The translations under genes were made by a program, and so were the position numbers. A stretch of 64,000 bases of DNA from IMG/VR virus record IMGVR_UViG_3300021511_000003, positions 1 through 64,000 of that record, one strand, 5' to 3'. Positions 4,436-59,050 of the stretch are shown here, in pieces (the stretch's first letter is position 1; each line of letters starts with the position of its first letter). The notes under the pieces were generated by a model. It was not told the DNA's origin, ran no database searches, and saw only the letters and a program-made list of their open reading frames with translations.

Positions 4436-4447
4436 CGTTGGAATATT

Positions 4448-4942: not shown

Positions 4943-4950
4943 AATTTTCC

Positions 4951-5502: not shown

Positions 5503-5515
5503 TTCATCTTTATAA

Positions 5516-6016: not shown

Positions 6017-6017
6017 T

Positions 6018-24085: not shown

Positions 24086-25024
24086 TTATTCCTTTTTACA
24101 TTTTATAATAGATAATTTTTGAGTGTTGCATTCTGTTTCTTTTTTATGACCATATTTATAATGACACTTCTTACAAACAGCTATTGTATAATCAGGATCA
24201 AGTGCAAAAAATGGTTCTAATTTTTTTGGTTTTATATGATGAACTTCTGTTGCTTTTTTACCACAATATTGACAAGTATAATTATATCTTGTCATTACAA
24301 ATTGATTAAGAGTATGGAGTTCACTTGAACTATATGTGAATTTATCATCTTCTTCTGTTTTATATGGATCATTTCTTAGTCTATATAATGGACATTCATT
24401 TTTACATTCTTCACAACAATAAAAATAACTTCCACCGTTACCTTTTTCTAATTGTCTTATTCTTTCATAAAGTTGAATATAAGTTGGTGTAAACCAACCA
24501 CCTTGTTCTTTAGAATTCGAGCAATTGTGATTTTTACATCTAACTTGAATTTCTTTTACATCAATATTAATAGGGTTATAACGCATTTCTTCAATTTTAG
24601 AAAAAAACGGATATCTTTTATTAATAACTTTTATTGTCATCCTTCTATTTTCATATACACTTTGTTTATATTTTTTTCCTTTGGCATTCACATTTCCTTT
24701 TAAAGCTTTTTGTAGTTTTTCTTTTGTCTCTTTATTAATTATTTTTCCTTTGTGGGAATCACTAATTTTTTGTTTGTGTATTTCTGTTAATTTTTGATGA
24801 TGCCAATAATTTTTTATTCCTGAATGTGACTCTTTCATTTTTTTTAAAGTTTCTTCTGAGTATATATTAGTCTTTCCTTTATTCCATGGAATATACTTTT
24901 TCATCTTTACGCTTATTTTACGTTTTACTTCGGGGCAATGATTATAATTTTTACTACAACACCATTTTCCATTTTTAAATTGGTAGTTTACTTCTTGACC
25001 ACATCCATAGTCACACTTTGGCAT
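24086..25024 (-). CDS. HNH homing endonuclease with NUMOD3-like repeats
   Basis: PWNKGK...YSEETLKKMKESH, KISDSHKGK; C-terminal CQYCG...VHHIKP...CKKCH. Confidence 0.85.
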   Translation of the reverse strand: MPKCDYGCGQEVNYQFKNGKWCCSKNYNHCPEVKRKISVKMKKYIPWNKGKTNIYSEETLKKMKESHSGIKNYWHHQKLTEIHKQKISDSHKGKIINKETKEKLQKALKGNVNAKGKKYKQSVYENRRMTIKVINKRYPFFSKIEEMRYNPINIDVKEIQVRCKNHNCSNSKEQGGWFTPTYIQLYERIRQLEKGNGGSYFYCCEECKNECPLYRLRNDPYKTEEDDKFTYSSSELHTLNQFVMTRYNYTCQYCGKKATEVHHIKPKKLEPFFALDPDYTIAVCKKCHYKYGHKKETECNTQKLSIIKCKKE

Positions 25025-31006: not shown

Positions 31007-31894
31007 TTATAAATAACGTCTACCATCAAATCCGTTAATGTGACCGCCTTTCCAATTAACTGCAATTGCTTCGGAAGTGTGTATTGATTCCTCATGACTA
31101 CATTTGATAATCCAATCTATAATACCATCCAGTGAATTAATCGAAGTTGAAATTGATCGTATAGCATCTTCAACAAACATTGGATTTTCGCCAGCAATTC
31201 GAGCAATTTCTTGTTCATCAACTCTTTTAATTATAGGGTATGGTAGAGTTGGAATAACATTTTCAACAGCTTCAATAACATCTTCCAGCCAGACATATTT
31301 ATCGCTGGATGTATCAGTTTCAACTAATACATCTGCATATGATCTTTGATTATGAGGGTATCCTTTTGTTTCAAGAACGCTACATAATTCAGCAGAACAC
31401 GGACAGTATGATGCATATTGTATTGTTGCTCCCTGAAAGAATCTATAATACCAATTTTGTTGATCTATGATTACATCATCATATAATTGACCTTCAAATC
31501 TACATTTATAATAAAGCGGAAATTGATTATCAGATATGACCGACTTTCTAATTATTGGTATTCTGAAATCAAATGTCATGTATGCAGCATTGGTTCCAGG
31601 TGTTTCATTCAGTCCAATATTTTCAAGTAATTTTTCAAGTATTTCTTTTATCAATTTGCTTTTTAAAGGCAAATCCAAATATGGTTTTAATGTAAGTAGT
31701 AATCTTGACATTGAAATACCTTTAATATTAGAATCAAGTCTTGTTCTTAAAGACACATTGGCAATTGCTTCATTAAACCCGCCGTACTTAGATTCTAACT
31801 TAAATGGTACCTCCACATTTTCAACCCCAACTTGCATAATGGGCATTTTAATGTTTGGTATTGTGCATTGAATATCTGGTAAATCTTTGGACAT
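31007..31894 (-). CDS. folE2: GTP cyclohydrolase I, FolE2/MptA type
   Basis: LPDIQ, GISMSRL, YCPCS, PHNQRS, ENPMFVEDAIR, ESIH. Confidence 0.92.
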   Translation of the reverse strand: MSKDLPDIQCTIPNIKMPIMQVGVENVEVPFKLESKYGGFNEAIANVSLRTRLDSNIKGISMSRLLLTLKPYLDLPLKSKLIKEILEKLLENIGLNETPGTNAAYMTFDFRIPIIRKSVISDNQFPLYYKCRFEGQLYDDVIIDQQNWYYRFFQGATIQYASYCPCSAELCSVLETKGYPHNQRSYADVLVETDTSSDKYVWLEDVIEAVENVIPTLPYPIIKRVDEQEIARIAGENPMFVEDAIRSISTSINSLDGIIDWIIKCSHEESIHTSEAIAVNWKGGHINGFDGRRYL

Positions 31895-38575: not shown

Positions 38576-38780
38576 TTTTTTTAGATTCCTTTTTATCGAT
38601 CTTGATTTTTATCTTATCAACTCCTTTGTCAACTATTTCATCTGCTGTATCAGCAGTACGTTCAACCATCAGTTTAATTAATGATCTTATTGATTTTTTA
38701 CCTGTTGTTGCAATATCATCAATAATAATTTTAATCTGTTTTTTCACTTCTTTATTAGTTAATTTTTTTTTATTTTCCAT
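38562..38780 (-). CDS. Small basic hypothetical protein
   Basis: ORF track; GGAG RBS inside the upstream gene. Confidence 0.55.
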   Translation of the reverse strand: MENKKKLTNKEVKKQIKIIIDDIATTGKKSIRSLIKLMVERTADTADEIVDKGVDKIKIKIDKKESKKNEKD

Positions 38781-39127
38781 GCTCCTAACACCTCTTGTTT
38801 TTTATATTGTATTTCATCCCAAGGTGTAAAGTAACAGTCATCTAAATTAAAGCATAATAACATATTAGTAATCATATTTTTAGACTTGTTCGTTAAATTA
38901 TATTTTCGTAAACTATGTGGTATACAAAACTCTCCACTTTTTGGTATTGCATTTGGGTGTGGATTATCTAATATAACCATATCAATTTTACCATTAACAG
39001 TTTTAACAATAAAACCATCAACTTCAAATTTATTTGCTAGTTTCGTAATTGTATATATTTCATTTTTATATATTAATTTCCTTGGTTTGATAAATTCGGT
39101 TATTTCATGATTTTTTATTATCATCAT
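38759..39127 (-). CDS. Small putative E2/UBC-like protein
   Basis: HPNAIPKSGEFCIP resembles the E2 signature HPN-x(7)-C with one extra residue; coupled to the upstream ThiF gene by ATGA overlap. Confidence 0.5.
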   Translation of the reverse strand: MMIIKNHEITEFIKPRKLIYKNEIYTITKLANKFEVDGFIVKTVNGKIDMVILDNPHPNAIPKSGEFCIPHSLRKYNLTNKSKNMITNMLLCFNLDDCYFTPWDEIQYKKQEVLGAWKIKKN

Positions 39128-39984
39128 GCAGCTCCGGTTTCAGGAATTAACTCGACATAAACATTACTGTTTTCATTGTATAGTGATATTACAAAATTAT
39201 TAAAATCTGTCTGACAAGATACTAAAGACATAAATAATGTAATTAAATCTTTACCATTTTTCAAAGAGTTCATTGGAATCACTTTTTCAGAAACAGGAAA
39301 CATTCTACTTCCAAGAAATACAGTAACATCTTTATCTTTGTTTATATCCATTATTGGGACAATTTTATCTGGCAAATTTAAAAATTTTTCATTCCCCAGA
39401 ATGTTTTCATATACTATATCATAATTTTTATTATCAATATGCTTGACATAATCGAGTTCATATTTTTGAATAGATTTACTTTTTATAAGAGTTGTAATTA
39501 TATCACAATGAATCAACATAGAAATAATTGAAGCAGCATACCTCAAATCATTTCTTGATAATTCTAAAATATATTTTCCAGCCTGTAAGCAAGAGTATGT
39601 AACATTTTTTCTAAAGTCACCCATTAAATATCTTGATGATATGTAAAATCTTGCATCAATCTCTTTTTGTCGATCATAGGTATAATCTCTACAATCAATT
39701 ACTAAATCCTCTTTTATAAGTTTTGTTTTACCTTCCTTATATTTACTTTGAAATGCACATATTTCAAGATCAGGATTTTGATCATGTAGAATATCTTTTA
39801 GAGCTTCGACTTTTGGGGCACCTATATCGACTTGTCGGTAAATCGAATTCTTCAAATTCTTTTTCTCAACTATATCGTGGTCTAATATAACTATCTTCTC
39901 AATTCCTTCCAAATTAGCTATAGCTTCTGCTACAAATCCACCGAGTGTTCCTAACCCAATTATTACTATATTTTTATACACCAC
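39124..39984 (-). CDS. Divergent ThiF/E1-like protein with C-terminal extension
   Basis: IIGLGTLGG, DHDIVEKKNL, GAPKVEAL, IDCRD; lacks the canonical NxxRQ arginine; ends VELIPETGAA. Confidence 0.8.
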   Translation of the reverse strand: MVYKNIVIIGLGTLGGFVAEAIANLEGIEKIVILDHDIVEKKNLKNSIYRQVDIGAPKVEALKDILHDQNPDLEICAFQSKYKEGKTKLIKEDLVIDCRDYTYDRQKEIDARFYISSRYLMGDFRKNVTYSCLQAGKYILELSRNDLRYAASIISMLIHCDIITTLIKSKSIQKYELDYVKHIDNKNYDIVYENILGNEKFLNLPDKIVPIMDINKDKDVTVFLGSRMFPVSEKVIPMNSLKNGKDLITLFMSLVSCQTDFNNFVISLYNENSNVYVELIPETGAA

Positions 39985-40013
39985 GGGTCATAGTCTCCTT
40001 TACTGATATTGTG

Positions 40014-40032
40014 GGGGGATACAATATCCCCC
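40014..40032 (-). terminator. GC hairpin GGGGGATA-CAA-TATCCCCC (plus-strand sequence)
   Basis: 8-bp stem between 40052-40618 and the second ThiF gene; U tract weak. Confidence 0.5.
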
Positions 40033-40051
40033 TCATTATAAAAACTGATAT

Positions 40052-40618
40052 TTATAGTTGAGCTTCCTCCATCGGTTCAGTGAAAATATCTAGTTCTTTA
40101 AGCATTTGTTGTTCTTCAGTACCAACCGGAACTGGTCGATAATGTGATTTATACTTAAAGAAATTATTTGCCAATTTAATGGGATAGCTTAAGGGGATAT
40201 TATATGAATATTTCTTTATTTTACCACTTTTCAAAATATTAACTGGTAATGTCGGATCTATTCGTGATAATTCTCCAGCAATTTCACTCCTGAAATGAAG
40301 GTCACCTTTTGCATCTTTTACTTTAAAAGATCGGTTAATAACTTTATCATCTCGGGATGAACCGTTGATTTTCATTTTATTTTCTTTTCTGATCAATGCT
40401 TTCATAGCGCGACCAAATGCTATATTTTTTCCTTTTACTTTTGAAAATGTATCGCGTAGAGAGCATATTGCAACTCCTCTTGATTCAATACGTTTTAACT
40501 TTGAATTGATAAAAACACAAGCTGTGAAAACATTATTCGCAATAGCACTTCCTGCAACATAAAATGCTACTTTATCAACTCTATTGTTGTTCAATATCTT
40601 TTGTGTTTCAGGATTCAT
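40052..40618 (-). CDS. Conserved phage hypothetical protein
   Basis: GVAICSLRDTFSKVKGKNIAFGRA, a CSxxDxF-x-KxxG-xx-IA pattern I recognise from other phage proteins. Confidence 0.7.
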   Translation of the reverse strand: MNPETQKILNNNRVDKVAFYVAGSAIANNVFTACVFINSKLKRIESRGVAICSLRDTFSKVKGKNIAFGRAMKALIRKENKMKINGSSRDDKVINRSFKVKDAKGDLHFRSEIAGELSRIDPTLPVNILKSGKIKKYSYNIPLSYPIKLANNFFKYKSHYRPVPVGTEEQQMLKELDIFTEPMEEAQL

Positions 40619-40642
40619 ATCATATTCCTTTGTTATTGGTTA

Positions 40643-40660
40643 GGGGGCCCGAAGACCCCC
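40643..40660 (-). other. Stable RNA hairpin GGGGGUC-UUCG-GGCCCCC downstream of the Ubl gene
   Basis: C(UUCG)G tetraloop on the mRNA strand; no U tract follows. Confidence 0.7.
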
Positions 40661-40674
40661 ATTTCTAATGATAT

Positions 40675-41145
40675 TTAACCTTTCTTCCCTGCTGGTTTCA
40701 GGAATTCCAGATTGTCGCCGGAGTTTAGAACATACTCCGCATCGACTTCTTTGCCATTAACCAGTCCTGTAGAAAGACGATCAACATTCAGAACTTCACG
40801 AAGGAAGTCACCAACTTCTTTTACGCTCTTACCGGCAACTGGGAAATTACCAGAAGATGCTCCACAAGATACATGAATGGTTGTGGTGGCACGGGAACCG
40901 AAAGGGGCATCGGGTTTAGTAATTGTACTTTGACCGGTAAACTGAATACCGGTAAGTTTTTCCATTGCCTTTTCGGGAGCTTTGCTAATTGTTGAACCAC
41001 CGCCATAACGAGCGAGAATTGCATTGATAACGGTATTTTTATTTTTTTTGGAAACCCCCGGGATATTCAATTCATCAATACACATTCTTTTAAGGGCTTT
41101 GGATGTTTTGGCTTCAAGTTCTTCTCTTTTGAAAATTCTTCCCAT
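40675..41145 (-). CDS. Ubiquitin-like (beta-grasp) modifier with N-terminal HeH/Rho-N-like domain
   Basis: C-terminal ~70 aa IHVSCG...VAGKSVKEV...LVNGKEV...VLNSGDNLEFLKPAGKKG-COOH; N-terminal LEAKTSKALKRMC...IPGVSKKNKNTVINAIL. Confidence 0.8.
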   Translation of the reverse strand: MGRIFKREELEAKTSKALKRMCIDELNIPGVSKKNKNTVINAILARYGGGSTISKAPEKAMEKLTGIQFTGQSTITKPDAPFGSRATTTIHVSCGASSGNFPVAGKSVKEVGDFLREVLNVDRLSTGLVNGKEVDAEYVLNSGDNLEFLKPAGKKG

Positions 41146-41161
41146 TGTAAAATCTCCTTTG

Positions 41162-41848
41162 TTAATGTTTCACGATTCGAATTTTTGCATCTGCAGTCAT
41201 TTTTGTTAAATCAAAATAAACTTCAGATCGTTCATACTCGTCTTTGACTACAACGTTGTAGAAAGACCAACACATCAAAGTTGCAACCCCCAGATTTGCA
41301 AAGTATAGTTGGGGGTCAGAATGAGCAAGCTCATCACAACTCATTTCTTCTGGTAATTTATCATCTGGCTCTGCTATTTCTGGATGATATGCACATAGAT
41401 CAGGAGTTAAGTCTTTTCCATCTCTTCTAATATAAATCTGCACATTACCATCTGTATAGTCATTGCCACCAGAAATTAAAATAACATTTTGTAAATTTTT
41501 ACAGTAATTGGATACAATCATTCTGGTTTTGTGATTATCAACACATAGAAATACAATATAGTCTTCTTTAATAACTTCTTCTACAGTTTTTTCATTTACA
41601 AAAGCTTCGAATGCATTAAACTCTAGTCCATCAAATTTCATTTCAAGTTCGGTAGCTTTTATATCAGCTTTATTTCCGATACGAAAAAACTCTTGTCGTT
41701 CATAATTTTTTTGTTCATACTCGTCTCCATCCACCAATAGTAATTCTGCATCAAGATCTTTTGAATAGTTTAAAAATCTACATAATCTCTCAACTAATAT
41801 AGAACCAACTCCACCAAGTCCAATAACTGATATAAACATGTCAGACAT
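41162..41848 (-). CDS. ThiF/E1 family activating enzyme
   Basis: VIGLGGVG, DGDEYEQKNYERQ, LCVDNHKTR, SGGND...GNVQ, MSC (candidate catalytic Cys), QLYFAN. Confidence 0.92.
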   Translation of the reverse strand: MSDMFISVIGLGGVGSILVERLCRFLNYSKDLDAELLLVDGDEYEQKNYERQEFFRIGNKADIKATELEMKFDGLEFNAFEAFVNEKTVEEVIKEDYIVFLCVDNHKTRMIVSNYCKNLQNVILISGGNDYTDGNVQIYIRRDGKDLTPDLCAYHPEIAEPDDKLPEEMSCDELAHSDPQLYFANLGVATLMCWSFYNVVVKDEYERSEVYFDLTKMTADAKIRIVKH

Positions 41849-43386
41849 TATAAAACCTCTCTTTTAAATACTTTTTTAAACATAGCCATGAGACCATTTG
41901 GTTGTTCTGATATTGGTATTATGGTTGATCCTGGTTCCGGTATTCTTTGAATAGGTTCATCCTCCTTTTTAGCAGCTTGAGTTATCTCATCTACTTCTCG
42001 TGTTAAAAGCACTCCTTTATTTGTATATGGTTGTTCAGGTTTTTCTATACTATTAATTGGAGTGTAACAGAAAGGACAAGTTTCATCACTATTGTTTAAG
42101 TGAAAGCCATTACCACATTCTTTACATTTAATATATGAAGATTCTTCAATTTCTTTTGTAGAATCTTTTTTAAACATGTGGTCATATTCATCGCCTGGTA
42201 TATATTGATCTGACAGAACTTCCTCTTTATCTAATAGAATAAGATGTTCATTTGTATTACATGTGGAACATTGGAGTTCGAATCCTTCTTCCTCTTTAAC
42301 AATCTCGCCACAATTTTTACAAAAATACATCTCTTCAAAATCATCTTCCTCAATCTCAGAAGTAAGTTTGCAAAGTCTATGAGTGCATGTGGCACATGGT
42401 ACAAAGTCACCATCCTGAGTATGTGGAGGGAACTTTAAAGGTGTTGGTATCACTGGTTTAATACCTGGCTTGGAAGCACGTGAATTAATATTTTTTCCAT
42501 TTTGCTTCCAAATAGAACGATCATAATTAAAACCCCAACCATCATTATATGCATGAGCAGCATATCCATACCATCCAGCGTATCCATTACGATAACTTGG
42601 GAAGGTGTAAACACCCTTTTCTACCATACTCATCCAGTTTTTATTGAAAATACGATCCTCATCTGAGCATACTATATCATATCTACGATCAAATTTTTTA
42701 CGCTCGAATGGATATTTGGGCTTGACATCTACATCTTCAATAAGTTTTCCATTTTTCCATTTATAAACTGTTTTAACTGATTTATTATCAATGGAATTAG
42801 TTTCAGACATACACACTATATTATCAATATATTTTTCAGGTTCTATCATTTGTCGAAACCCGTTTGATACAATTGATGAAGAAAGGCTGGGATATTTATC
42901 ACCTAAATCTCCAAATGTCAGATGAAGTCCATCAAAATGTTCTTCATCACTATCATCAACTCCTGAATGAAACGCTGACATGTTTCCATGACTATGAATA
43001 GTTCCAATCATTGTATATCCATCAATAGTCAAACCTTTATCATAATCACAGCTAGCACCTGCGACTTTTTGATGTGGCGGAACAATTTTATGTTCTCCCG
43101 TTTGTTCATTATAGAACAATAGAACGATTGCTTCTGATCTGTTATATGTATCATATACTTCTCGAAAAAAGCTTATAACTTTTGCAATATATTTTCCAGG
43201 AATCTTTGTAATATGCATTCGTGCACTTGATGCCACACTTTCAAGAATTGAGATATTTTTAACCGGTGCAATACTTTCCATTACACCAAGTTTCTTTTTA
43301 AGAAATACTCCCTCCTTACCAATAATATAATAAATATCATCTTTAGGCATTTCATTTTGCCCATCATTCAGGACTACTTTAAACAT
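41848..43386 (-). CDS. JAB/MPN metalloprotease with C-terminal zinc ribbons
   Basis: SEAIVLL, GTIHSHGNMSAFHSGVDDSDE; CATC, CKNC...CSTC, CKEC...CPFC. Confidence 0.9.
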   Translation of the reverse strand: MFKVVLNDGQNEMPKDDIYYIIGKEGVFLKKKLGVMESIAPVKNISILESVASSARMHITKIPGKYIAKVISFFREVYDTYNRSEAIVLLFYNEQTGEHKIVPPHQKVAGASCDYDKGLTIDGYTMIGTIHSHGNMSAFHSGVDDSDEEHFDGLHLTFGDLGDKYPSLSSSIVSNGFRQMIEPEKYIDNIVCMSETNSIDNKSVKTVYKWKNGKLIEDVDVKPKYPFERKKFDRRYDIVCSDEDRIFNKNWMSMVEKGVYTFPSYRNGYAGWYGYAAHAYNDGWGFNYDRSIWKQNGKNINSRASKPGIKPVIPTPLKFPPHTQDGDFVPCATCTHRLCKLTSEIEEDDFEEMYFCKNCGEIVKEEEGFELQCSTCNTNEHLILLDKEEVLSDQYIPGDEYDHMFKKDSTKEIEESSYIKCKECGNGFHLNNSDETCPFCYTPINSIEKPEQPYTNKGVLLTREVDEITQAAKKEDEPIQRIPEPGSTIIPISEQPNGLMAMFKKVFKREVL

Positions 43387-45958
43387 TAATCATACTCCTT
43401 TCATCATTTATGAATTCAAATATTGAAGAATTACAGGTATAAGTATGTCCGTGGCAATTTGTCCAACCTCTTTTAGTACCAATTTCATTCTGTATTCTTT
43501 GTGAAATTCTTGGATTTAATATATAATCGAATTTGTAGTTTACAGCAGTATATTTATCCAGTAAAGTATACCTTGGAATTCGTGTATAATATTTCAAGTC
43601 TAATATATTTAACTTATGATTACCGTTTATCTTAAACACAATGCAACCGGCATCGGTTTGATATTCATTCTCACCAACAATAATATCACCAGGTTGAAAT
43701 TTAATTTTTGCAATATCAATGGGGGCATGTGAAATAGTTGCCCATTTTTTATTCGTCATTGAAATTTTCTTGAACTTATTGATTACATCACTGTACCATA
43801 AAGTACAACAATTTGAACATAGTACTAATGGATCAGACCCACCTGTATCTGTTATAAAACCAATGATAATATGTGTATCTTTTTTAAGGAAATGTAAAAT
43901 ACCAGTCTCTTGAGCTTGAATTTTCATCCCTGCTGTAAGGTTGCCATATACATTTGTAATATGCCTGATTTTTCCTGTAAATATTGATCCGGTTGGTCCA
44001 TCAACATACTTTATTTGGTGTAGTATACCTTCCTTATCAGCTAATATAAAATGTATATCTCCTCTCTCTTCATTAAATTTAAATCCTTGAATTATTTTTA
44101 TCGAAAGCATATTTATTGGATTTTCCCAATCAGAAGTAACAACTTTGTCTCCTATAGCAAAGTCAATGTTCATATCATAACTTTCAACTCTGAATTTATC
44201 ATCGTTCAAAATATATTTTTTTATTTCCAATGGTGATGGAATTGCGGCAGATTGATATCTATTATCAATTGCGACACCATTTGGAGTACCAAATGTTGTA
44301 CCTTCCATGGGATCATGTGTATTTCGTCTCGACATTATTAATGTACGACCGACTCTAACAAGTGGCGGTAATGGTTTGATAGTTTCTGTATCAAATATCA
44401 ATGAATTGTGTATTGTTGAATCTATGTTTATTCTAAAATAGTCATTATTTAAGTTATCATCTATACTTCGAAATTGTAGTTTTAATCTATCTGTATGATC
44501 AACATTAAAATCATCATATTTTACCAAATAACCACTGAGTAGGGGGGTTTCATTTGTTGCACCATTTATAAATAAATAAGTTTTATCCTTTGTTAGTTTA
44601 AGACCATTATATACTGGGTTTGATAAATTATAAACTTTCGCTTCTAAATGTTCAAGAATATAGAAACCATCACCAAAACATGCTTCGTGATATCCTTCTT
44701 GATTAAGACGAATATAACCAACCTTCTTATATACAGTATTACCGATACCATTTTTCATTTGAACAATGTCATCCTTTTTAACAATATCACCATTTTTCAA
44801 CGTACCTTCTTTTTCGTATCGAAGTTCTATAGTTTTTTCTTTCAGAAATTTTGAAAATGCTTTTGTGTTTTTATAAATAATCAAACGACCATCTTCTCTT
44901 TCAACTCTGAAATATTTGATACCTCCACTATTTTCAAAACTAATAAGCGAATTGATATAACACATACGTTTATTATTTTTAATAAGGAATGGATCTCCTA
45001 CATGAATATAAAATTTGTTATCCAGAAATACACCCTCTGCAACATCATAGTATAACTTATATTTCTTTTTGGCTCGCTTTGTTGGTTTGGCAACTTTACC
45101 TGTATCCATTTTTGTTGAAAACATTTGAGTGAGGGATTTATATTCAACTTGTTTTGTGGTTTTATTATTATGTCGTTTTATTTCATCAATGGCTTGACCA
45201 AAATTCATTGGAATTTTAATCCAGTCAACATTATAAATAAACATAGGATTTAATTTAGATAAACCCTGCCATTCCATATATGTACTAACACCAGCAACTT
45301 TTTCATATGCATGATAGTTATACATGTAGTCATTATTAAACTCAGCACCCCAGAATACATTAATTGCTTTTTCAACTGCTGCATTCAATGACTCAGATAT
45401 TCCACTTGATTTAGTACCAAAACAAATATACTGACTTTCTGAAATATTTGGTAATGGTATTTTAAGAAGATAATCTGATAATCCTGTTAATCTTGCAACT
45501 CTCAAAAATGCCTGACCACATCGTATATCATAAAAATCATCGATATATAAAATAAAGATAACATATGGGAATGCCAAATTAAATGACGGTACTTCATCAA
45601 TGTTGGTTGTAAAATTTTCACTATAATCATATTTTTCAAGTCTACCACTACGTTTTAGTATATTAGTTTCACGTTGAAAATTTAAATCGATTTTAATTGT
45701 TCTAAACGCTGGTGGTTCTTCAATAGCAATGATATACCCACCTTGTACTCTTTCCATAAATCTACAATTTGGTGGTAAAACATTCATTGATTGATCGTTT
45801 ATAGTAAGTGCAATACGTTTAAGATAATCTATAGTAAGAAGGGATTTCTTATGAATAACTGGTAATGAATCATTATTTAATATTGAATCCTTGTATTCAG
45901 ATCTATATAAATTCGTATACTTTGAGTTTATTCTTATTTCATTTTTTAAATTCATCAT
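43379..45958 (-). CDS. Prokaryotic E2-like conjugating enzyme (PRTRC-B/Prok-E2 type) with ~600-aa C-terminal extension
   Basis: LAFPYVIF...LLKIPLPNISESQYICFG...VFWGAEFNND within the first ~230 aa; adjacent to JAB, E1 and Ubl genes. Confidence 0.75.
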   Translation of the reverse strand: MMNLKNEIRINSKYTNLYRSEYKDSILNNDSLPVIHKKSLLTIDYLKRIALTINDQSMNVLPPNCRFMERVQGGYIIAIEEPPAFRTIKIDLNFQRETNILKRSGRLEKYDYSENFTTNIDEVPSFNLAFPYVIFILYIDDFYDIRCGQAFLRVARLTGLSDYLLKIPLPNISESQYICFGTKSSGISESLNAAVEKAINVFWGAEFNNDYMYNYHAYEKVAGVSTYMEWQGLSKLNPMFIYNVDWIKIPMNFGQAIDEIKRHNNKTTKQVEYKSLTQMFSTKMDTGKVAKPTKRAKKKYKLYYDVAEGVFLDNKFYIHVGDPFLIKNNKRMCYINSLISFENSGGIKYFRVEREDGRLIIYKNTKAFSKFLKEKTIELRYEKEGTLKNGDIVKKDDIVQMKNGIGNTVYKKVGYIRLNQEGYHEACFGDGFYILEHLEAKVYNLSNPVYNGLKLTKDKTYLFINGATNETPLLSGYLVKYDDFNVDHTDRLKLQFRSIDDNLNNDYFRINIDSTIHNSLIFDTETIKPLPPLVRVGRTLIMSRRNTHDPMEGTTFGTPNGVAIDNRYQSAAIPSPLEIKKYILNDDKFRVESYDMNIDFAIGDKVVTSDWENPINMLSIKIIQGFKFNEERGDIHFILADKEGILHQIKYVDGPTGSIFTGKIRHITNVYGNLTAGMKIQAQETGILHFLKKDTHIIIGFITDTGGSDPLVLCSNCCTLWYSDVINKFKKISMTNKKWATISHAPIDIAKIKFQPGDIIVGENEYQTDAGCIVFKINGNHKLNILDLKYYTRIPRYTLLDKYTAVNYKFDYILNPRISQRIQNEIGTKRGWTNCHGHTYTCNSSIFEFINDERSMINV

Positions 45959-45963
45959 AACAT

Positions 45964-46344
45964 TTATTCACCTCGTAGAAATTTATATCGTTTGGCATAT
46001 TCAGTTAATATCATTTCAGGTCTATTATCATTGATTGACCATACTCTTTGCCTCTTTATTGAGAGAGTTTTTGATTCTCTAAAAATATATTCTTTTCTAG
46101 ATGTTACAAATAATACAGCTAACCAAACATCTTCACTTTCACGTTCTAATGAAAGAAAAGCAATTTCATTTGTTATTCTTCCAGGAACTTCCAGTGTAAG
46201 AAATAGATTTGGTCCCTTTGGAATTATTTCAGTATGTATAATATTTTCTTCTTCTTCTTCAGAAATCATATCACATAATTGTCTTATTTCATCAATATTA
46301 TTATCACCTTTGATTTCTGAAAGTAATTTATTTAAAATTCCCAT
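45964..46344 (-). CDS. Hypothetical protein
   Basis: ORF track; AGGAG RBS. Confidence 0.65.
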   Translation of the reverse strand: MGILNKLLSEIKGDNNIDEIRQLCDMISEEEEENIIHTEIIPKGPNLFLTLEVPGRITNEIAFLSLERESEDVWLAVLFVTSRKEYIFRESKTLSIKRQRVWSINDNRPEMILTEYAKRYKFLRGE

Positions 46345-46720: not shown

Positions 46721-47767
46721 TTATTCTCCCCGTTTATCAGAGTGTACTAACGTATTTACTCCTTCTTCTGTTTCATCAAGATATTGACTCATCATCAAGC
46801 ATGAATGATTACAGGATTTACAATAATATTGCTTGTCTGACACTATTGCATTGAATACATACGCAGATATAAGATGTGGATCTGTTTTATCAAACAACTG
46901 TGTTACATTCAATTCTGGACTCGAAACACCCTTGATTCTCAAACATAATCTAATTGTTCCATCTGCATCAATTGAAATATTATGCAAACCTTGTTCCAAT
47001 TTGCAATCATAATTTGTTGGTAATGTATTAAACATTTTTGGGATTAAAATGTCTTTCATATGAACATATAAAGATAGATTGTTTACAATATTAACCAACT
47101 CCTCTGCTAATCTGAATGTTGGTTGAACTAATGTTTTTATATCCCAAACATTTGAAAAGTCGTAAAATGGACTTTTTGCAATATCAACAAATGTAATATC
47201 GCTATATATGTTATTCATACTCAACTGTTCTACGAGTTTATACAATAGATGTTGATTATGATTCATAACTGTTATTTCAGCCACAACATCCTTAACTTTA
47301 CCTGCTTCCTGAATCTCCTTCAATCTTTTGAGACCTTCAATGCTTTTCATTACTCGATCTTCATCTGCACCGATTTCATTAAAGATTGGATCCACTGAAC
47401 TCGTAAAACCTTCTATATGATCAACCTTATCAAATAACTTTTTGATTAATGGTTGAATTGTTGGGGTGTTGTTCGTAATAATGGTATAGTAGATTTCATT
47501 GTCATTACAATAATTTATAATATCAGGTAGATCAGGTCTTAATAATGGTTCACCACCATAAAATATATGAAACACATCTGGATTGTGAACCTTAAATGCT
47601 GCAAGGGTTTTAATAACAACTTCTGTTGGCATTTCATTTTTGATATAATGTTTCATATCAGGATATAGATATGGTTTTCCATTATAGTTTCTCACAATAG
47701 CACAATATTCACATTCAAGATTACATTTTCTTGTGAGAAGCCAATTTACAATTCTTACTTGACTCAT
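46721..47767 (-). CDS. Radical SAM enzyme with SPASM/twitch-like C-terminus
   Basis: CNLECEYC, YGGEPLLR, C...ISIDADGTIRLC, CKSCNHSC. Confidence 0.92.
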   Translation of the reverse strand: MSQVRIVNWLLTRKCNLECEYCAIVRNYNGKPYLYPDMKHYIKNEMPTEVVIKTLAAFKVHNPDVFHIFYGGEPLLRPDLPDIINYCNDNEIYYTIITNNTPTIQPLIKKLFDKVDHIEGFTSSVDPIFNEIGADEDRVMKSIEGLKRLKEIQEAGKVKDVVAEITVMNHNQHLLYKLVEQLSMNNIYSDITFVDIAKSPFYDFSNVWDIKTLVQPTFRLAEELVNIVNNLSLYVHMKDILIPKMFNTLPTNYDCKLEQGLHNISIDADGTIRLCLRIKGVSSPELNVTQLFDKTDPHLISAYVFNAIVSDKQYYCKSCNHSCLMMSQYLDETEEGVNTLVHSDKRGE

Positions 47768-52111: not shown

Positions 52112-53508
52112 TATTCACCTCTAATTATTTTATATGTCGTTTCTCGGTCTATTTTATTTAATTTATTTTTTGAGTATATTAAATATTCAATAGGCCAGTT
52201 TTCTTCATTATAATAATGTTCACGTTTATAAAATGTATTCGCCATATATTTACAACCATAATCAACCATATCAACAACTATTGGTGTTAATTTTCCTTCT
52301 TTATTTCTAATAACTCTTCCTGTTAATTGTTTAATGTTTGATATAGGGGATGTCATAATAACTGAATCTTTCCATGGTGCATCAATACCATCTCGACATT
52401 TTCCGGGAGTTGCGAATGTTATTTGTGAATTAAGAGTTTCAAGTCCACCCGTCCCACAAAATTTGGCTTTGTCTTTATTAGGCATTAGTTCATAAAGATC
52501 ATCAATCAACTTAATTCTTTCAGCTATACATATCAGTTGTCTTGATTTAAAACGTCCCAATAAACCCCTCATTACCTCTATAAACGGTTTTGATTTTTTT
52601 ATTAGATTAAGATATCTAGATCGTTGAAAATCACCACCCCAACGAATATAACGTGACCTCCTTGGTGTATCTATTTGATAATCTAATAAAATTACAATAA
52701 CTTTCGCTGTCATTGTACCTTCTGAATCATCATCTGCATATATCGGTCCAAGATGAAATTCAATAATATCTCCATTCCCATCATGCCTATATGGAGTTGC
52801 ACTCAAACCATACACACATCTTGATGGAATATGTATTGAACATTCTGAAAATGTTGGTGCCCCAACTGTTGTATGTACTTCATCTGCTACACACACGCCC
52901 ACATTTGCGTCATTTAATTTAACTAAGAAATCTTTACGTTTTCTTTTTAATAATGATATAAATGTTTGAACTGTAGTAATAATTATTGGTTTATCAAGAT
53001 CCTTTTCAAATGTTGCTGAACTTAGAGTCGCAATATTATCATCTTTCAAATTTGTAAACTCTTTGAATCTATTACGCCATTGTTTTGCAAGAGGATCTCT
53101 ATGAACTAAAATTATTGCTTTCTTTTTTCTTTCAGCTATCATGTAAATTGAAATTATAGTTTTACCAACCCCCGGGGCTAGTTGTAATGTTGCATTTTCA
53201 TTTTCCATGATATGTTGTATTGCTTTTACTTGTGCTTCACTCCTTGGGGTAATATTATGCTCAATATTTATGTCTTGCCCATCATGCCTAATATCCTGGA
53301 TTTCACAGTCAGATATGTATTTTTGAATCGGAAAATCCCGTGGTATTAAGAGAAATTTCTCCGATTCAATATAGAAAGTTTGGATAGTATAATTGGATGT
53401 ATTATATGCTTTTATCCTTCTTTCCAAAAATTCTTTTATTCTAATGTACCATTCTTCATATTGATGATCCTTAGAAATTAGTAATCCAGAACGTTTTATA
53501 ATTTTCAT
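52111..53508 (-). CDS. SF2 DExH helicase (UvsW-like)
   Basis: APGVGKT, DEVH, LSATP, DGID, QLTGRVIR. Confidence 0.9.
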   Translation of the reverse strand: MKIIKRSGLLISKDHQYEEWYIRIKEFLERRIKAYNTSNYTIQTFYIESEKFLLIPRDFPIQKYISDCEIQDIRHDGQDINIEHNITPRSEAQVKAIQHIMENENATLQLAPGVGKTIISIYMIAERKKKAIILVHRDPLAKQWRNRFKEFTNLKDDNIATLSSATFEKDLDKPIIITTVQTFISLLKRKRKDFLVKLNDANVGVCVADEVHTTVGAPTFSECSIHIPSRCVYGLSATPYRHDGNGDIIEFHLGPIYADDDSEGTMTAKVIVILLDYQIDTPRRSRYIRWGGDFQRSRYLNLIKKSKPFIEVMRGLLGRFKSRQLICIAERIKLIDDLYELMPNKDKAKFCGTGGLETLNSQITFATPGKCRDGIDAPWKDSVIMTSPISNIKQLTGRVIRNKEGKLTPIVVDMVDYGCKYMANTFYKREHYYNEENWPIEYLIYSKNKLNKIDRETTYKIIRGE

Positions 53509-53939
53509 TCTCTACTATATACCGCCTTTGAATTTTCATTTTCATAAACTGTTACATACTCAAGTTTAAATTTAATCTTCATATCTGAAAAGATTTTATC
53601 TAATTTGAAAAACAGTTGTTGTGAAAGTCTTTCTGCTGTTGGATCATGATCTTCATTATCAAAAATCATTGATCTTAAGCACATTTTATCTGCAAGTGGT
53701 TTCAACCATTGTTCATCTATCTTATTAACTAACAATGTATGATCATATTGATCAAGCAAAGAACCAACGATTGATTTTAAATCTGAAAAGTCAATGATCA
53801 TATCATCTTTATTTAATTTCTCACTTTTCAAACCAACAAGAATTGTAAAATTGTGACCATGAATAGAAAAACAACGCCCTTTGTTTTTACTCAATCTATG
53901 ACCAATTGGTACTGTGAATCTTTTTTCAATTCTATACAT
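53505..53939 (-). CDS. queD: 6-carboxy-5,6,7,8-tetrahydropterin synthase
   Basis: GHRL...GRCFSIHGHN, IIDFSDLK, DHTLL, PTAE, VYENENS. Confidence 0.9.
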   Translation of the reverse strand: MYRIEKRFTVPIGHRLSKNKGRCFSIHGHNFTILVGLKSEKLNKDDMIIDFSDLKSIVGSLLDQYDHTLLVNKIDEQWLKPLADKMCLRSMIFDNEDHDPTAERLSQQLFFKLDKIFSDMKIKFKLEYVTVYENENSKAVYSRE

Positions 53940-58888: not shown

Positions 58889-59050
58889 TTAATCCTCCGT
58901 TATATATAATGGAAATATTAATACTATACCATTAAACATTCCCATAATTGAAAATAATAACATCCCATCGCTTCCCTTATTAATAGCAGAAATGAATTTG
59001 CTTAATATATAAGTATAATAAAACATTGATAATATTAAATGATGTTTCAT
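58889..59050 (-). CDS. 53-aa membrane protein (not in ORF track)
   Basis: Manual translation MKHHLILSMFYY...LLFSIMGMFNGIVLIFPLYITED; ATGA overlap with the vWA gene. Confidence 0.55.
   Translation of the reverse strand: MKHHLILSMFYYTYILSKFISAINKGSDGMLLFSIMGMFNGIVLIFPLYITED

What the first reader, a model, noticed from the sequence alone, without database searches (positions are those of the whole stretch)
38759..45958. Phage-encoded, apparently complete ubiquitin-like conjugation system (E2-JAB-E1-Ubl) next to the phage RNA polymerase genes
Seen: four contiguous co-oriented genes, the first three overlapping. They are an E2-like ORF (LPNISESQYICFG), a JAB protease (HSH-x7-S-x2-D), a ThiF/E1 (GLGGVG, NYERQ, SC) and a beta-grasp protein ending in a free Gly (AGKKG). 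Established: E1+E2+JAB+Ubl operons are the architecture of PRTRC-type cassettes and of the bacterial Bil antiphage system, which conjugates a Ubl to phage proteins; CBASS Cap2/Cap3 uses related enzymes. Inference: here the whole machinery is on the phage side, among core replication and transcription genes, with no defence effector or mobility genes nearby. The phage may tag host or its own proteins, or counter host Ubl-based defence. The Ubl already ends in Gly, so the JAB would act as a deconjugase and make the mark reversible. I cannot verify how novel this arrangement is without a search.
Basis: partly seen in the sequence, partly recalled or inferred. Interest (0 to 1): 0.92.

Follow-up and report, generated by a model that had tools for sequence, protein, structure and literature searches.

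The report
Phage-encoded ubiquitin-like conjugation gene module
An uncultivated jumbo phage, and every sampled relative in its clade, carries next to its RNA polymerase genes a conserved set of genes that looks like a complete, reversible ubiquitin-like protein-tagging system, which suggests that phages as well as bacteria may use such tags.

Summary
On the minus strand lie an 859-aa protein with an N-terminal Prok-E2_D-type E2 domain (invariant Cys179), a JAB protease with an intact JAMM motif, a ThiF-type E1 (invariant Cys171), and a Ubl ending in an invariant Gly.
- The E2 is fused to about 600 aa of KOW/Tudor-like beta-barrels.
- The Ubl carries an N-terminal Rho_N/SAP-like module.
- A second E1-like gene follows, with an invariant G-[A/G]-A C-terminus.
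- That gene is translationally coupled to a 122-aa protein with an invariant HPN...C motif, a candidate mini-E2.
- A 126-aa partner lies upstream.
- A conserved hairpin follows the Ubl gene.

Gene order is identical in all 70 related phage loci (26-54% identity). The family is nearly absent from 185,579 cellular genomes.

The core triad is homologous to the uncharacterised Prok-E2_D–JAB–ThiF cassettes (Iyer 2006 class 6d, PRTRC-like). It is not a Bil or CBASS member. Similar triads occur in isolated Bacillus and Vibrio phages, one with a poly-Ubl. I found no paper describing them.

I read it as a working conjugation and deconjugation system with unknown targets (confidence 0.6). It is a new variant of a known, functionally unstudied kind.

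The parts
45964..46344 (-). g126: a conserved 126-aa protein immediately upstream of the E2 gene. Its fold is unknown. The C-terminus is ...K[F/Y]LRG followed by one acidic residue, and three homologues end exactly at LRG. It is a possible second modifier or precursor, or an accessory subunit.
   Evidence: Present in 64 of 70 loci; the rest are cut by contig ends. Gly125 is at least 90% conserved. No Pfam or PDB sequence match.
43379..45958 (-). E2L859: an 859-aa protein. It has a small N-terminal alpha+beta unit (residues 1-54), a Prok-E2_D-type E2 domain (about residues 60-250) and a chain of SH3-like beta-barrels (about residues 284-859). I read the barrels as target- or partner-binding, which would make this an E2/E3-like hybrid.
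   Evidence: 34 of 35 family members hit Prok-E2_D. hhalign against stand-alone E2_D proteins gives 93.6-96% probability. The AF2 model has pLDDT 87.6. Top Foldseek hits are Spt5/DSIF KOW repeats (E 7e-7) and the SETDB1 tandem Tudor (E 8e-4). 85 full-length homologues of about 860 aa were found.
45209..45781 (-). The E2 (UBC-like) domain of E2L859. The active-site loop LPNISESQYICFG is at 45416-45454, and the invariant Cys179 codon is at 45422-45424.
   Evidence: N171, C179 and G181 are invariant in 35 sequences. The motif was translated. It aligns with PFxN...[IV]CWG of plasmid and phage Prok-E2_D proteins.
41848..43386 (-). JAB/JAMM metalloprotease (512 aa). It has a PRTRC_A-type N-terminal domain, a JAB core, and a variable C-terminal half with Zn-ribbon-like CxxC pairs. 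The JAMM motif is at 42955-42996.
   Evidence: Prok-JAB E 7.5e-5 and PRTRC_A E 8.6e-10 over residues 19-176. E85, H131, S132, H133, S141 and D144 are at least 95% conserved in 60 sequences. The motif was translated.
41162..41848 (-). ThiF1: a 228-aa E1-like adenylating enzyme. Its nucleotide-binding motifs are intact (GLGGVG, DGD, NYERQ, VDN) and it has an invariant Cys171 as candidate thioester site.
   Evidence: Pfam ThiF 6.7e-17 and PRTRC_ThiF 5.8e-11 over residues 4-218. The best PDB match is UBA5, at 2e-4.
40675..41145 (-). Ubl: 156 aa. It has an N-terminal Rho_N/SAP-like helix-extended-helix module (about residues 5-45), a variable linker, and a C-terminal ThiS/TGS-like beta-grasp (about residues 85-156). 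It ends in an invariant G-x-K-G.
   Evidence: Of 46 family members, 37 hit Rho_N (best 1.1e-8), 36 hit TGS, 31 hit ThiS and 11 hit Ub-Mut7C. G153, K155 and G156 are invariant, and some homologues carry one or two extra C-terminal residues.
40643..40660 (-). A GC-rich hairpin (7-bp stem, UUCG loop) 15 nt after the Ubl stop codon. It is probably a terminator, attenuator or mRNA 3' stabiliser. It separates g126-E2-JAB-E1-Ubl from the ThiF2-g122-RNAP genes.
   Evidence: Sequence. All 52 distinct related loci have a strong hairpin in the 70 nt after the Ubl gene (-12.8 to -32.9 kcal/mol), with differing sequences. Background 70-nt windows average -7.9 with sd 3.75, and 0.44% reach -20 or lower.
40052..40618 (-). 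g188: a 188-aa ORF of unknown function. It is an optional insert between the two halves of the module.
   Evidence: Present in 21 of 70 loci only. No Pfam hit.
39124..39984 (-). ThiF2: a second E1-like protein (286 aa). Residues 1-100 form a Rossmann half that best matches the E1 domain of CBASS Cap2. The canonical NxxRQ arginine is not conserved. The C-terminal half is novel and ends in an invariant G-[A/G]-A at the very C-terminus.
   Evidence: Pfam ThiF 2.9e-19 over residues 5-116. PADLOC E1-E2 7.1e-14. hhalign against ThiF1 gives 95.9% over about 100 residues, with N46/S47 aligned to R51/Q52. C-termini are L[IL]xETG[AG]A in about 60 sequences, and G284 is invariant. The fold of the C-terminal part is unresolved.
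38759..39127 (-). g122: a 122-aa candidate mini-E2. It has invariant His57-Pro58-(Asn59) and Cys68. It overlaps ThiF2 by 4 nt, so the two are translationally coupled.
   Evidence: Alignment of 47 sequences. A profile search of PDB places the motif on the HPN...C active site of UBC enzymes, weakly (E 0.16 and 0.36). The AF2 model has pLDDT 93.2. Top Foldseek hits are E2 enzymes but weak: E 0.7-2, TM about 0.3. hhalign against the E2L859 E2 domain aligns HPN...C with LPN...C, P = 0.034. Present in 68 of 70 loci.

Best explanation
This is a phage-borne, reversible ubiquitin-like protein-conjugation system. It descends from the Prok-E2_D–JAB–ThiF–Ubl cassettes of plasmids and other mobile elements, and it is fixed as a core module of one clade of jumbo phages.

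Proposed path (every step is inferred from homology; none is measured):
1. The JAB protease trims any residue after the Ubl's C-terminal Gly.
2. ThiF1 adenylates Gly156 of the Ubl with ATP and may hold it as a thioester on Cys171.
3. The Ubl passes to Cys179 of the E2 domain of the 859-aa protein.
4. That protein's C-terminal array of KOW/Tudor-like barrels chooses the target, so it would act as an E2/E3 hybrid. The Ubl is then joined to a target lysine.
5. The JAB removes the mark again.

The Ubl's Rho_N/SAP-like head would bring a nucleic-acid or partner-binding module to whatever is tagged.

A second, translationally coupled pair lies behind a conserved hairpin. It consists of ThiF2 (Cap2-like) and the 122-aa HPN...C protein. 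This pair forms a second E1-E2 arm. It may load the same Ubl, or it may activate another C-terminus; ThiF2's own invariant G-[A/G]-A tail and the LRG-[E/D] tail of g126 are candidates.

Targets are unknown. The position of the module, among replication, recombination and RNA polymerase genes on the same strand, suggests action early or mid infection on host or phage DNA- or RNA-associated proteins.
For: - Domain identities are supported.
- All catalytic residues are invariant or nearly so across 35-60 diverged homologues. These are E2 N171/C179/G181, JAB E85/H131/H133/S141/D144, ThiF1 G-x-G-G-x-G, NxxRQ, VDN and C171, and the Ubl terminal G-x-K-G.
- 17 Ubl homologues carry a 1-2-residue extension after the Gly. 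This makes sense only if the Gly carboxylate must be exposed by a protease.
- Gene order g126–E2–JAB–E1–Ubl–(g188)–ThiF2–g122 is kept in all 70 loci, at 26-54% identity.
- The E2, JAB and E1 genes overlap, and so do ThiF2 and g122.
- The E2 domain is homologous to stand-alone Prok-E2_D proteins that sit in the same E2–JAB–ThiF order on Bacillus and Alicyclobacillus plasmids and in Bacillus phage KLEB27-3. The phage also has a 4x Prok_Ub protein.
- A high-confidence model shows beta-barrel repeats after the E2 domain.
- No thiamine or molybdopterin synthase, rhodanese or cysteine desulfurase was found among the ORFs scanned.
- Published precedent exists that bacterial E1/E2/JAB sets do conjugate proteins: Bil and CBASS Cap2/Cap3 (PMC10097602, PMC11601596).
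Against: - There is no biochemical evidence, and the phage is uncultivated.
- The window's own E2 and JAB scores are below Pfam and NCBIfam cut-offs. The E2 call rests on family-wide and profile-profile evidence.
- I could not test the UBC fold of the E2 domain by structure search on its own. The long barrel array dominated the Foldseek list.
- The closest cellular relatives (PRTRC / class 6d) have themselves never been shown to conjugate anything.
- The Ubl's best sequence matches are ThiS and TGS, and both E1s are small ThiF-type enzymes without a separate Cys domain, as in sulfur-carrier systems.
- The Ubl ends K-G, not G-G.
- The roles of ThiF2, g122 and g126 are guesses. Fold-level support for g122 as an E2 is weak (TM about 0.3).
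Confidence: 0.6

Rival explanations
1. One pathway, different wiring. ThiF1 and ThiF2 form a heterodimeric E1, with one active and one degenerate adenylation domain, as in eukaryotic SAE1/SAE2 or the tandem domains of BilD. The 122-aa HPN...C protein is the true E2. The 859-aa protein is an E3-like scaffold whose E2-like domain, or its invariant C-terminal Cys714, relays or positions the Ubl.
For: - ThiF2 lacks the conserved NxxRQ arginine that ThiF1 keeps.
- Both E1-like genes are present in all 70 loci.
- g122 carries the full canonical HPN...C motif, whereas E2L859 has LPN...C.
- The C-terminal region of E2L859 has a cluster of invariant polar residues: R665, K679, D704, C714, S715, N716, T719, Q755, D758 and R817.
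Against: - A conserved hairpin separates the two E1 genes into different transcription units.
- ThiF2 is translationally coupled to g122, not to ThiF1.
- Related plasmid and phage cassettes work with a single ThiF and a stand-alone E2_D.
- ThiF2 keeps its invariant glycine loop, D35, K58 and the DCR motif, so it need not be inactive.
Confidence: 0.15
2. Counter-defence device. The module mainly acts on host ubiquitin-like immunity (Bil, type II CBASS, Bub). The JAB would strip host Ubl or cGAS conjugates from phage proteins. The E1/E2 enzymes would divert or exhaust the host modifier, or load a decoy Ubl.
For: - Host systems that tag phage proteins with Ubls, and that are reversed by JAB enzymes, are documented (PMC11601596, PMC10097602).
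- The Rossmann half of ThiF2 is most similar to Cap2 E1 domains (7.1e-14).
- ThiF2's C-terminal G-[A/G]-A resembles the conserved Gly/Ala C-terminus of Cap2 substrates (PMC10097602).
Against: - The JAB, E2 and Ubl have no PADLOC match to BilA, BilB, BilC or Cap3.
- The phage encodes its own strictly conserved Ubl, co-transcribed with the enzymes. A pure eraser would not need one.
- The module is universal and syntenic in the clade (70 of 70 loci). Anti-defence genes are usually patchy accessory genes.
Confidence: 0.12
3. Sulfur-carrier or adenylation chemistry, not protein tagging. The E1 enzymes adenylate and thiocarboxylate the ThiS-like Ubl. The Ubl then donates sulfur for a cofactor, tRNA or DNA-base modification. 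This could be linked to the nearby radical SAM, FolE2 and QueD-like genes.
For: - The Ubl's beta-grasp matches ThiS, TGS and MoaD best.
- Both E1s best match ThiF and MoeB adenylyltransferases.
- JAB + ThiS-like + E1 sets do occur in sulfur-assimilation operons (PMC1779556, Table 1 row 4).
- A radical SAM gene is syntenic two genes upstream, and 7-deazaguanine pathway genes are in the window.
Against: - Two E2-like proteins with invariant cysteines are part of the module, and sulfur carriers do not need them.
- The Ubl ends K-G rather than the G-G of ThiS and MoaD.
- The Ubl carries a Rho_N/SAP-like head.
- No rhodanese, cysteine desulfurase, ThiG/MoaE or PP-loop thiolase was seen in the scanned ORFs.
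- The known 7-deazaguanine pathway does not use ThiF (my own knowledge).
Confidence: 0.1

Closest known systems
Prok-E2_D–JAB(JAB-N)–ThiF–Ubl cassettes of plasmids and mobile elements (Iyer, Burroughs & Aravind 2006, class 6d; TIGRFAM/NCBIfam 'PRTRC' system)
   Same: - The three enzyme families are the same, in the same order E2–JAB–E1.
- The JAB has the PRTRC_A-type N-terminal domain.
- The E2 lacks the His of HPN.
- The Ubl has a conserved C-terminal Gly.
- The cassette is carried on a mobile replicon, often beside replication genes.
(PMC1779556)
   Different: - Scores are far below the PRTRC cut-offs (42 against 145 bits, and 38 against 102 bits).
- No PRTRC B-F or ParB proteins are present.
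- No invariant His follows the catalytic Cys.
- The E2 is fused to about 600 aa of beta-barrels.
- The Ubl is fused to a Rho_N/SAP-like module.
- There is an extra E1-like/E2-like pair and g126.
- The function of the reference family is itself unknown.
Bacillus phage vB_BauM_KLEB27-3 gp194-gp199, with related genes in Bacillus phages Edson and vB_BceM_WH1 and in Vibrio phages D69, D181 and D148
   Same: These are phage-encoded. KLEB27-3 has gp196 Prok-E2_D, gp195 JAB (noted in GenBank as 'PRTRC_A domain-containing'), gp194 ThiF, and gp199 with four Prok_Ub repeats. The Vibrio phages have adjacent E2_D and JAB genes.
   Different: - The E2 is a stand-alone protein of about 250 aa.
- The modifier is a poly-Prok_Ub, not a Rho_N + ThiS-like Ubl.
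- There is no second E1/E2 pair.
- The cassette is not next to RNAP genes.
- Accessory proteins show no detectable similarity to those here.
- I found no publication on these genes.
Bil (bacterial ISG15-like) antiphage system, BilA-D
   Same: The parts list is the same: a Ubl, an E2, a JAB deconjugase and an E1. Conjugation of a Ubl to a protein target is demonstrated there (PMC11601596 and references within).
   Different: - Bil is host-encoded defence.
- BilD is one large E1 with tandem inactive/active adenylation domains and a Cys domain.
- PADLOC BilA, BilB and BilC profiles do not match. BilD matches ThiF1 only at E 0.009.
Type II CBASS Cap2 (E2-E1 fusion) and Cap3 (JAB)
   Same: The first 100 residues of ThiF2 best match Cap2 E1 domains (7.1e-14). 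Cap2 substrates have a conserved C-terminal Gly or Ala (PMC10097602), and ThiF2 itself ends in an invariant G-[A/G]-A. ThiF2 is coupled to a small E2-like protein.
   Different: - The E1 and E2 are separate proteins, in the order E1 then E2.
- There is no CD-NTase and no effector.
- There is no Cap3 profile match.
- The system is encoded by the phage.
Lambda/T1 tail assembly proteins TAPI (Ubl) and TAPK (JAB + NlpC/P60); E1-like genes of Asgard-archaeal 'Nidhogg' viruses
   Same: Both are earlier cases of Ubl/JAB or E1-like genes in viruses of prokaryotes (PMC1779556; bioRxiv 10.1101/2021.07.29.454249).
   Different: Lambda has no E1 or E2, so it is a processing-only system. The Nidhogg viruses have only E1-like genes and are proposed to hijack host E2 and Ub. 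The set here is self-contained.

Membership tests
Prok-E2_D–JAB–ThiF–Ubl cassette (Iyer 2006 class 6d) | E2-like protein of the Prok-E2_D type, with a conserved Cys and without the His of HPN | tested here: met
   34 of 35 family members hit PF14460 (best 6.7e-6), though the window protein itself scores 15.8 bits against a gathering score of 25. hhalign against four stand-alone E2_D proteins gives 93.6-96%. LPN...C179 is invariant.
Prok-E2_D–JAB–ThiF–Ubl cassette (Iyer 2006 class 6d) | JAB peptidase with an extra N-terminal alpha+beta domain (JAB-N / PRTRC_A) and an intact JAMM motif | tested here: met
   PRTRC_A aligns over residues 19-176 (model positions 28-186 of 192), E 8.6e-10. E85, H131, H133, S141 and D144 are conserved. 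I did not check the conserved Arg/Trp of JAB-N individually.
Prok-E2_D–JAB–ThiF–Ubl cassette (Iyer 2006 class 6d) | Small beta-grasp protein with a conserved C-terminal Gly in the same operon | tested here: met
   G156 is invariant, and the family hits ThiS, TGS and Ub-Mut7C. The protein here is larger, with a Rho_N-like head.
Prok-E2_D–JAB–ThiF–Ubl cassette (Iyer 2006 class 6d) | An absolutely conserved His C-terminal to the catalytic Cys of the E2, and a rapidly diverging alpha-helical partner protein | tested here: not met
   No His is among the invariant or nearly invariant columns after C179 within the E2 domain. No helical partner was recognised. g126 shows no similarity to accessory proteins of the plasmid and phage cassettes.
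PRTRC system (NCBIfam TIGR03735-TIGR03741 set) | Proteins reach the curated cut-offs of PRTRC_A and PRTRC_ThiF, and PRTRC B-F plus a ParB-related protein are present | tested here: not met
   PRTRC_A scores 38.5 bits against a cut-off of 101.8, and PRTRC_ThiF scores 42.2 against 144.75. No other PRTRC model hit any of the seven proteins. No ParB appeared among the Pfam hits of neighbouring genes.
Bil system (BilA-D) | BilA, BilB and BilC profile matches, and an E1 with tandem inactive/active adenylation domains plus a Cys domain | tested here: not met
   PADLOC gives no hit for the E2, JAB or Ubl. BilD matches ThiF1 only at E 0.0094. The E1s are separate proteins of 228 and 286 aa.
Type II CBASS (Cap2/Cap3) | An E2-E1 fusion protein, a Cap3 JAB, and a CD-NTase with an effector | tested here: not met
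   Only the Rossmann half of ThiF2 matches Cap2 models. No fusion, CD-NTase or effector domain was found in the module.
ThiS/MoaD sulfur-carrier systems | A carrier ending in Gly-Gly, and a partner synthase or sulfurtransferase (ThiG, MoaE, rhodanese, IscS) in the neighbourhood | tested here: not met
   The Ubl ends in an invariant K-G. No such partner appeared among the 30 window ORFs scanned with Pfam. The rest of the 223-kb genome was not examined.
Canonical UBC E2 fold (for the 122-aa protein) | An HPN motif followed 8-9 residues later by the catalytic Cys | tested here: met
   H57, P58 and C68 are invariant, and N59 is at least 90% conserved, in 47 sequences.
Canonical UBC E2 fold (for the 122-aa protein) | UBC three-dimensional fold, or a significant UQ_con profile match | tested here: inconclusive
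   The AF2 model is confident (pLDDT 93.2). 12 of the top 30 Foldseek PDB hits are E2 or UEV (E2-variant) chains, including 6 of the top 7, but at E 0.7-4.5 and TM about 0.3. UQ_con was hit by 1 of 47 members, at 0.0059. The profile against PDB scores E 0.16-0.36 at the active-site motif only.

The most novel reading that the evidence does not exclude
This jumbo-phage clade runs its own two-armed writer/eraser ubiquitin-like system to reprogram transcription or the nucleoid during infection. The E2's KOW/Tudor-like barrel array docks on RNA polymerase or a DNA-bound complex, of either host or phage. It attaches a Ubl whose Rho_N/SAP-like head then tethers or blocks nucleic acid. The second arm, Cap2-like ThiF2 with the mini-E2, conjugates a different C-terminus: ThiF2's own G-A-A tail or that of g126. 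This would be the first virus-encoded, self-sufficient ubiquitination-like cascade acting inside a bacterial cell. It would also give the PRTRC-like cassettes their first function.
Probability: 0.15. Interest if true: 0.92.

Novelty: new variant of a known kind. Interest (0 to 1): 0.72.

Why it matters
Ubiquitin-like tagging in bacteria has so far been shown only as host defence against phages (Bil, type II CBASS). The much older predicted E2–JAB–E1–Ubl cassettes of plasmids (class 6d / PRTRC) still have no known function.

Here a whole phage clade keeps such a set as a core, syntenic module next to its RNA polymerase genes, and has elaborated it. The elaborations are an E2 fused to a large binding array, a Ubl with a nucleic-acid-type head, and a second E1/E2 pair.

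If the module conjugates proteins, three things follow:
- Phages also write and erase Ubl marks.
- The PRTRC-like family gains a testable biological context.
- Compact new E1/E2/Ubl parts become available for study.

Related triads in isolated Bacillus and Vibrio phages make the question experimentally approachable, even though this phage itself is uncultivated.

Tried and rejected
Searches that found nothing:
- blastn of the 7.2-kb region and tblastn of the 859-aa protein against 50,697 phage records gave no match. No cultured close relative exists.
- Single-sequence PDB searches of the E2, JAB and Ubl proteins were uninformative.
- PADLOC gave E1 hits only, so I rejected Bil and CBASS membership.
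- The literature searches found no description of a jumbo-phage E1/E2/JAB/Ubl system. The library is incomplete, so absence is not proof.
- A scan of 185,579 species genomes found only two MAG contigs. This argues against a cellular home for the family.

Tests that were blocked or inconclusive:
- The Foldseek search with the full 859-aa model was dominated by the beta-barrel repeats, so the E2 domain could not be tested alone.
- I asked whether ThiF2's C-terminal 90 aa is a fused Ubl. hhalign against the Ubl beta-grasp (P 0.32) and a profile against PDB (best E 0.24) gave nothing. Its beta-beta-alpha-beta-beta pattern is only my reading of the alignment.
- I asked whether g126 is a Ubl. It has no Pfam or PDB signal, and its conserved tail looks helical. 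This is left open.
- I asked whether the barrel array, g126, the Ubl or g122 are homologous to accessory proteins of the Bacillus, Alicyclobacillus or Vibrio cassettes. All hhalign probabilities were below 2%. The one exception is a partial E1-like match of ThiF1 to a Vibrio phage 251-aa protein, at 74%.
- Sigma-70-type promoter matches are not above shuffled expectation (77 against 64.7 +/- 7.3). No operon start could be called.
- No tRNA gave a host clue.

I also rejected the idea of inert or decaying genes, because of the invariant catalytic residues and the universal synteny.

Full report
**What is there**

The window is part of IMG/VR contig UViG_3300021511_000003 (223 kb). It has about 30% G+C. 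It carries a tail sheath, unsplit bacterial-type RNA polymerase beta and beta' genes, type II topoisomerase subunits, a helicase and SbcCD. These are the marks of a jumbo myovirus.

- 859 aa at 43379-45958
- 512 aa at 41848-43386
- 228 aa at 41162-41848
- 156 aa at 40675-41145

The first three overlap, by 8 nt and 1 nt. The quoted motifs translate as written.

**Identity of the four core proteins**

- *The 228-aa protein is a ThiF-family E1.* Pfam gives 6.7e-17. The best NCBIfam model is PRTRC_ThiF over residues 4-218, and the best PDB relative is UBA5. Across 59 homologues the glycine loop, DGD, NxxRQ, VDN and Cys171 are at least 95% conserved.
- *The 512-aa protein is a JAB/JAMM protease.* Prok-JAB scores 7.5e-5, and PRTRC_A scores 8.6e-10 over residues 19-176. 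Glu85, His131, His133, Ser141 and Asp144 are conserved. The C-terminal half is variable and contains Zn-ribbon-like motifs.
- *The 859-aa protein alone gives only a weak Prok-E2_D hit* (E 0.012). However, 34 of 35 diverged family members hit that model (best 6.7e-6). A profile of residues 55-260 aligns to stand-alone Prok-E2_D proteins from E2–JAB–ThiF cassettes at 93.6-96% hhalign probability. The alignment matches PLPNIS..QYICFG to PFxN....[IV]CWG. Asn171, Cys179 and Gly181 are invariant. From memory, the Asn-to-Cys spacing of 8 equals that of UbcH5 (Asn77 to Cys85).
- *The 156-aa protein family is a two-domain Ubl.* Its N-terminal part matches Rho_N in 37 of 46 members (best 1.1e-8). Its C-terminal 70 residues match TGS (36 of 46), ThiS (31 of 46) and Ub-Mut7C (11 of 46). 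So it is a helix-extended-helix head plus a beta-grasp. It ends in an invariant G-x-K-G.

1. *The E2 is fused to a barrel array.* An AlphaFold model of the 859-aa protein (35-sequence alignment, pLDDT 87.6) shows a chain of small beta-barrels from about residue 284 to the end. Its best PDB matches are the KOW-repeat region of Spt5/DSIF in Pol II complexes (E 7e-7 to 1e-4) and the tandem Tudor of SETDB1 (E 8e-4). TM-scores are low, as expected for flexible multi-domain chains. I therefore claim only SH3-like Tudor/KOW-type barrels. This region holds many invariant polar residues, including a C714-S-N motif.

2. *There is a second E1-like gene, ThiF2* (39124-39984; Pfam 2.9e-19).
   - Its first 100 residues best match the E1 domain of CBASS Cap2 (7.1e-14).
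   - It lacks the conserved NxxRQ arginine.
   - Its C-terminal half matches nothing.
   - It ends in L[IL]xETG[A/G]A in essentially every homologue, with Gly284 invariant.

3. *ThiF2 is coupled to a candidate mini-E2.* It overlaps by 4 nt a 122-aa gene (38759-39127) with invariant His57-Pro58 and Cys68 and near-invariant Asn59. This is the canonical E2 HPN...C signature.
   - The model is confident (pLDDT 93.2). It has a beta-meander, then the HPN loop and Cys, then helices.
   - E2 enzymes dominate the top Foldseek hits, but weakly (E 0.7-2, TM about 0.3).
   - A profile places the motif on UBC active sites at E 0.16-0.36.
   - I call it a candidate mini-E2, not a proven one.

4. *A conserved 126-aa gene lies directly upstream of the E2* (45964-46344). 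It ends ...LRG plus one acidic residue, and three homologues end at LRG. Its fold is unknown.

5. *A GC-rich UUCG hairpin sits 15 nt after the Ubl stop* (40643-40660).
   - All 52 distinct related loci have a strong hairpin of different sequence at that place (-12.8 to -32.9 kcal/mol).
   - Background 70-nt windows average -7.9 +/- 3.75.
   - It probably ends or stabilises the g126–E2–JAB–E1–Ubl transcript and sets it apart from ThiF2–g122–RNAP.

**Conservation and distribution**

- The 859-aa protein has 85 full-length homologues in metagenomes, at 27-54% identity, on contigs up to 309 kb. It also has 66 loci in IMG/VR.
- In all 70 loci fetched, the order is g126–E2–JAB–ThiF1–Ubl–(188-aa ORF in 21)–ThiF2–g122–...–RNAP beta'.
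- Only two MAG contigs among 185,579 species genomes encode the protein. Archaeal labels on some MAG contigs are therefore probably binning artefacts.
- No cultured phage has the 859-aa protein. RNAP beta' is only about 28% identical to its nearest phage or bacterial relatives.

**Relatives of the core triad**

- ThiF1 finds E2_D–JAB–ThiF sets on large plasmids, near replication genes. Examples are B. thuringiensis pAM65-52-3-235K and Alicyclobacillus p1, with further hits in clostridia. These belong to class 6d of Iyer et al. 2006, which lists B. cereus and B. thuringiensis (PMC1779556).
- Isolated jumbo Bacillus phage vB_BauM_KLEB27-3 carries gp199 (four Prok_Ub repeats, 5e-27), gp196 (Prok-E2_D), gp195 (JAB) and gp194 (ThiF).
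- Vibrio phages D69, D181 and D148 carry adjacent E2_D and JAB genes.

Phage-borne sets of this kind are therefore already in GenBank. I found no paper discussing them. The 2021 comparative survey of jumbo phages mentions no E1, JAB or Ubl. The nearest published idea concerns E1-like genes in Asgard viruses, which are proposed to hijack host ubiquitin systems.

**Mechanism**

The best-supported reading is a reversible Ubl-to-protein conjugation system. All steps are inferences from homology:
1. The JAB trims the Ubl where needed. 17 homologues carry one or two residues after the Gly, mostly Cys.
2. ThiF1 adenylates Gly156.
3. The Ubl moves to Cys179 of the E2 domain.
4. The barrel array selects the target.
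5. The JAB reverses the mark.

The second arm (ThiF2 + g122) may be a second E1-E2 pair. Cap2 substrates are defined by a conserved C-terminal Gly or Ala (PMC10097602). The invariant G-[A/G]-A tail of ThiF2 and the LRG-[E/D] tail of g126 are therefore candidates for additional activated C-termini. This is speculation.

**Rivals**

- A single pathway with a ThiF1/ThiF2 heterodimer and g122 as the true E2.
- A counter-defence device aimed at host Bil or CBASS marks.
- A sulfur-carrier role.

Features that count against the sulfur-carrier rival:
- The two E2-like proteins have invariant cysteines.
- The Ubl ends K-G.
- The Ubl carries a Rho_N-like head.
- No sulfurtransferase or synthase appears among the scanned ORFs.

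It is not excluded. The closest cellular relatives have never been characterised either.

**Membership and novelty**

The triad meets the architectural features of the class 6d / Prok-E2_D cassettes: E2_D without His, JAB with JAB-N, a ThiF, and a Ubl with terminal Gly. It fails the PRTRC equivalog cut-offs, and it lacks PRTRC B-F, ParB and the conserved His after the E2 Cys. It is not Bil and not CBASS by profile or architecture.

I therefore file it as a new variant of a known, functionally unstudied kind. What is new:
- The E2–barrel fusion.
- The Rho_N–Ubl fusion.
- The second E1/E2 pair and g126.
- The fixed position beside the RNAP genes.
- Its status as a universal core module of a phage clade.

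I score interest at 0.72. A specialist in bacterial ubiquitin-like systems would want to test it, and culturable phages with simpler versions exist. It is not categorically new, and nothing about function has been measured.

Noticed in passing
window 40643-40660 (minus strand), and the 70 nt after the Ubl gene in L001-L069: A GC-rich hairpin (7-bp stem, UUCG loop) lies directly after the Ubl stop codon. All 52 distinct related loci have a strong hairpin of different sequence at the same place, some followed by a U-tract. This is a conserved terminator, attenuator or mRNA-stabilising element.
   Followed up: partly
window 39124-39984 (minus strand), last 3-8 codons: The second E1-like protein ends in L[IL]xETG[A/G]A in essentially every homologue. 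Gly284 is invariant and the tail sits at the exact C-terminus. This resembles the Gly/Ala C-termini that Cap2-type E1-E2 enzymes activate. The fold of its last 90 residues is unresolved.
   Followed up: partly
window 45964-46344 (minus strand): The conserved 126-aa protein upstream of the E2 ends ...K[F/Y]LRG plus one acidic residue, and three homologues end exactly at LRG. The tail looks like that of a ubiquitin precursor, but there is no detectable beta-grasp signal.
   Followed up: partly
window 43379-44200 (C-terminal quarter of the 859-aa protein): A cluster of invariant polar residues lies within the barrel array: R665, K679, D704, C714-S715-N716, T719, Q755, D758 and R817. This suggests a second catalytic or specific binding site.
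   Followed up: no
window 31007-31894, 46721-47767 and 53505-53939 (all minus strand): The window holds FolE2 GTP cyclohydrolase (Pfam 8e-58), a radical SAM protein with a QueE-like PHROG match, and a PTPS/QueD-like gene (assigned by synteny with L001). This is a probable 7-deazaguanine (queuosine-precursor) pathway, as used by some phages for DNA modification.
   Followed up: no
L073 (Bacillus phage vB_BauM_KLEB27-3, OM634661) 718-6708; L074 (Vibrio phage D69) 4104-5879: Isolated phages carry simpler versions. The Bacillus phage has four Prok_Ub repeats, a 559-aa unknown, Prok-E2_D, JAB and ThiF. The Vibrio phages have adjacent E2_D and JAB genes, plus a 251-aa protein with a partial E1-like match. 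All are annotated as hypothetical.
   Followed up: partly
L003 (GCA_048882605.1, labelled Thorarchaeota), P0029 (labelled Pacearchaeota), L075 (labelled Thermoplasmatales MAG): Contigs of this phage clade, which have bacterial-type RNAP beta and beta', are deposited inside archaeal MAGs. This is probably a binning artefact. The host of the clade is unknown.
   Followed up: no
one search hits P0090, P0165, P0169, P0180, P0212 and P0226: The 122-aa HPN...C family has 359 clusters at 50% identity. This may make it broader than the 859-aa family, although the two counts come from different searches. Some members of 237-305 aa contain two tandem copies.
   Followed up: no
window 24086-25024 (minus strand): An ORF with NUMOD3 and HNH motifs, likely a homing endonuclease, sits among the structural and replication genes.
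   Followed up: no
window 59047-60306 (minus strand): A protein with a VWA-like domain (DUF2201) and a putative metallopeptidase N-domain lies near the topoisomerase genes.
   Followed up: no
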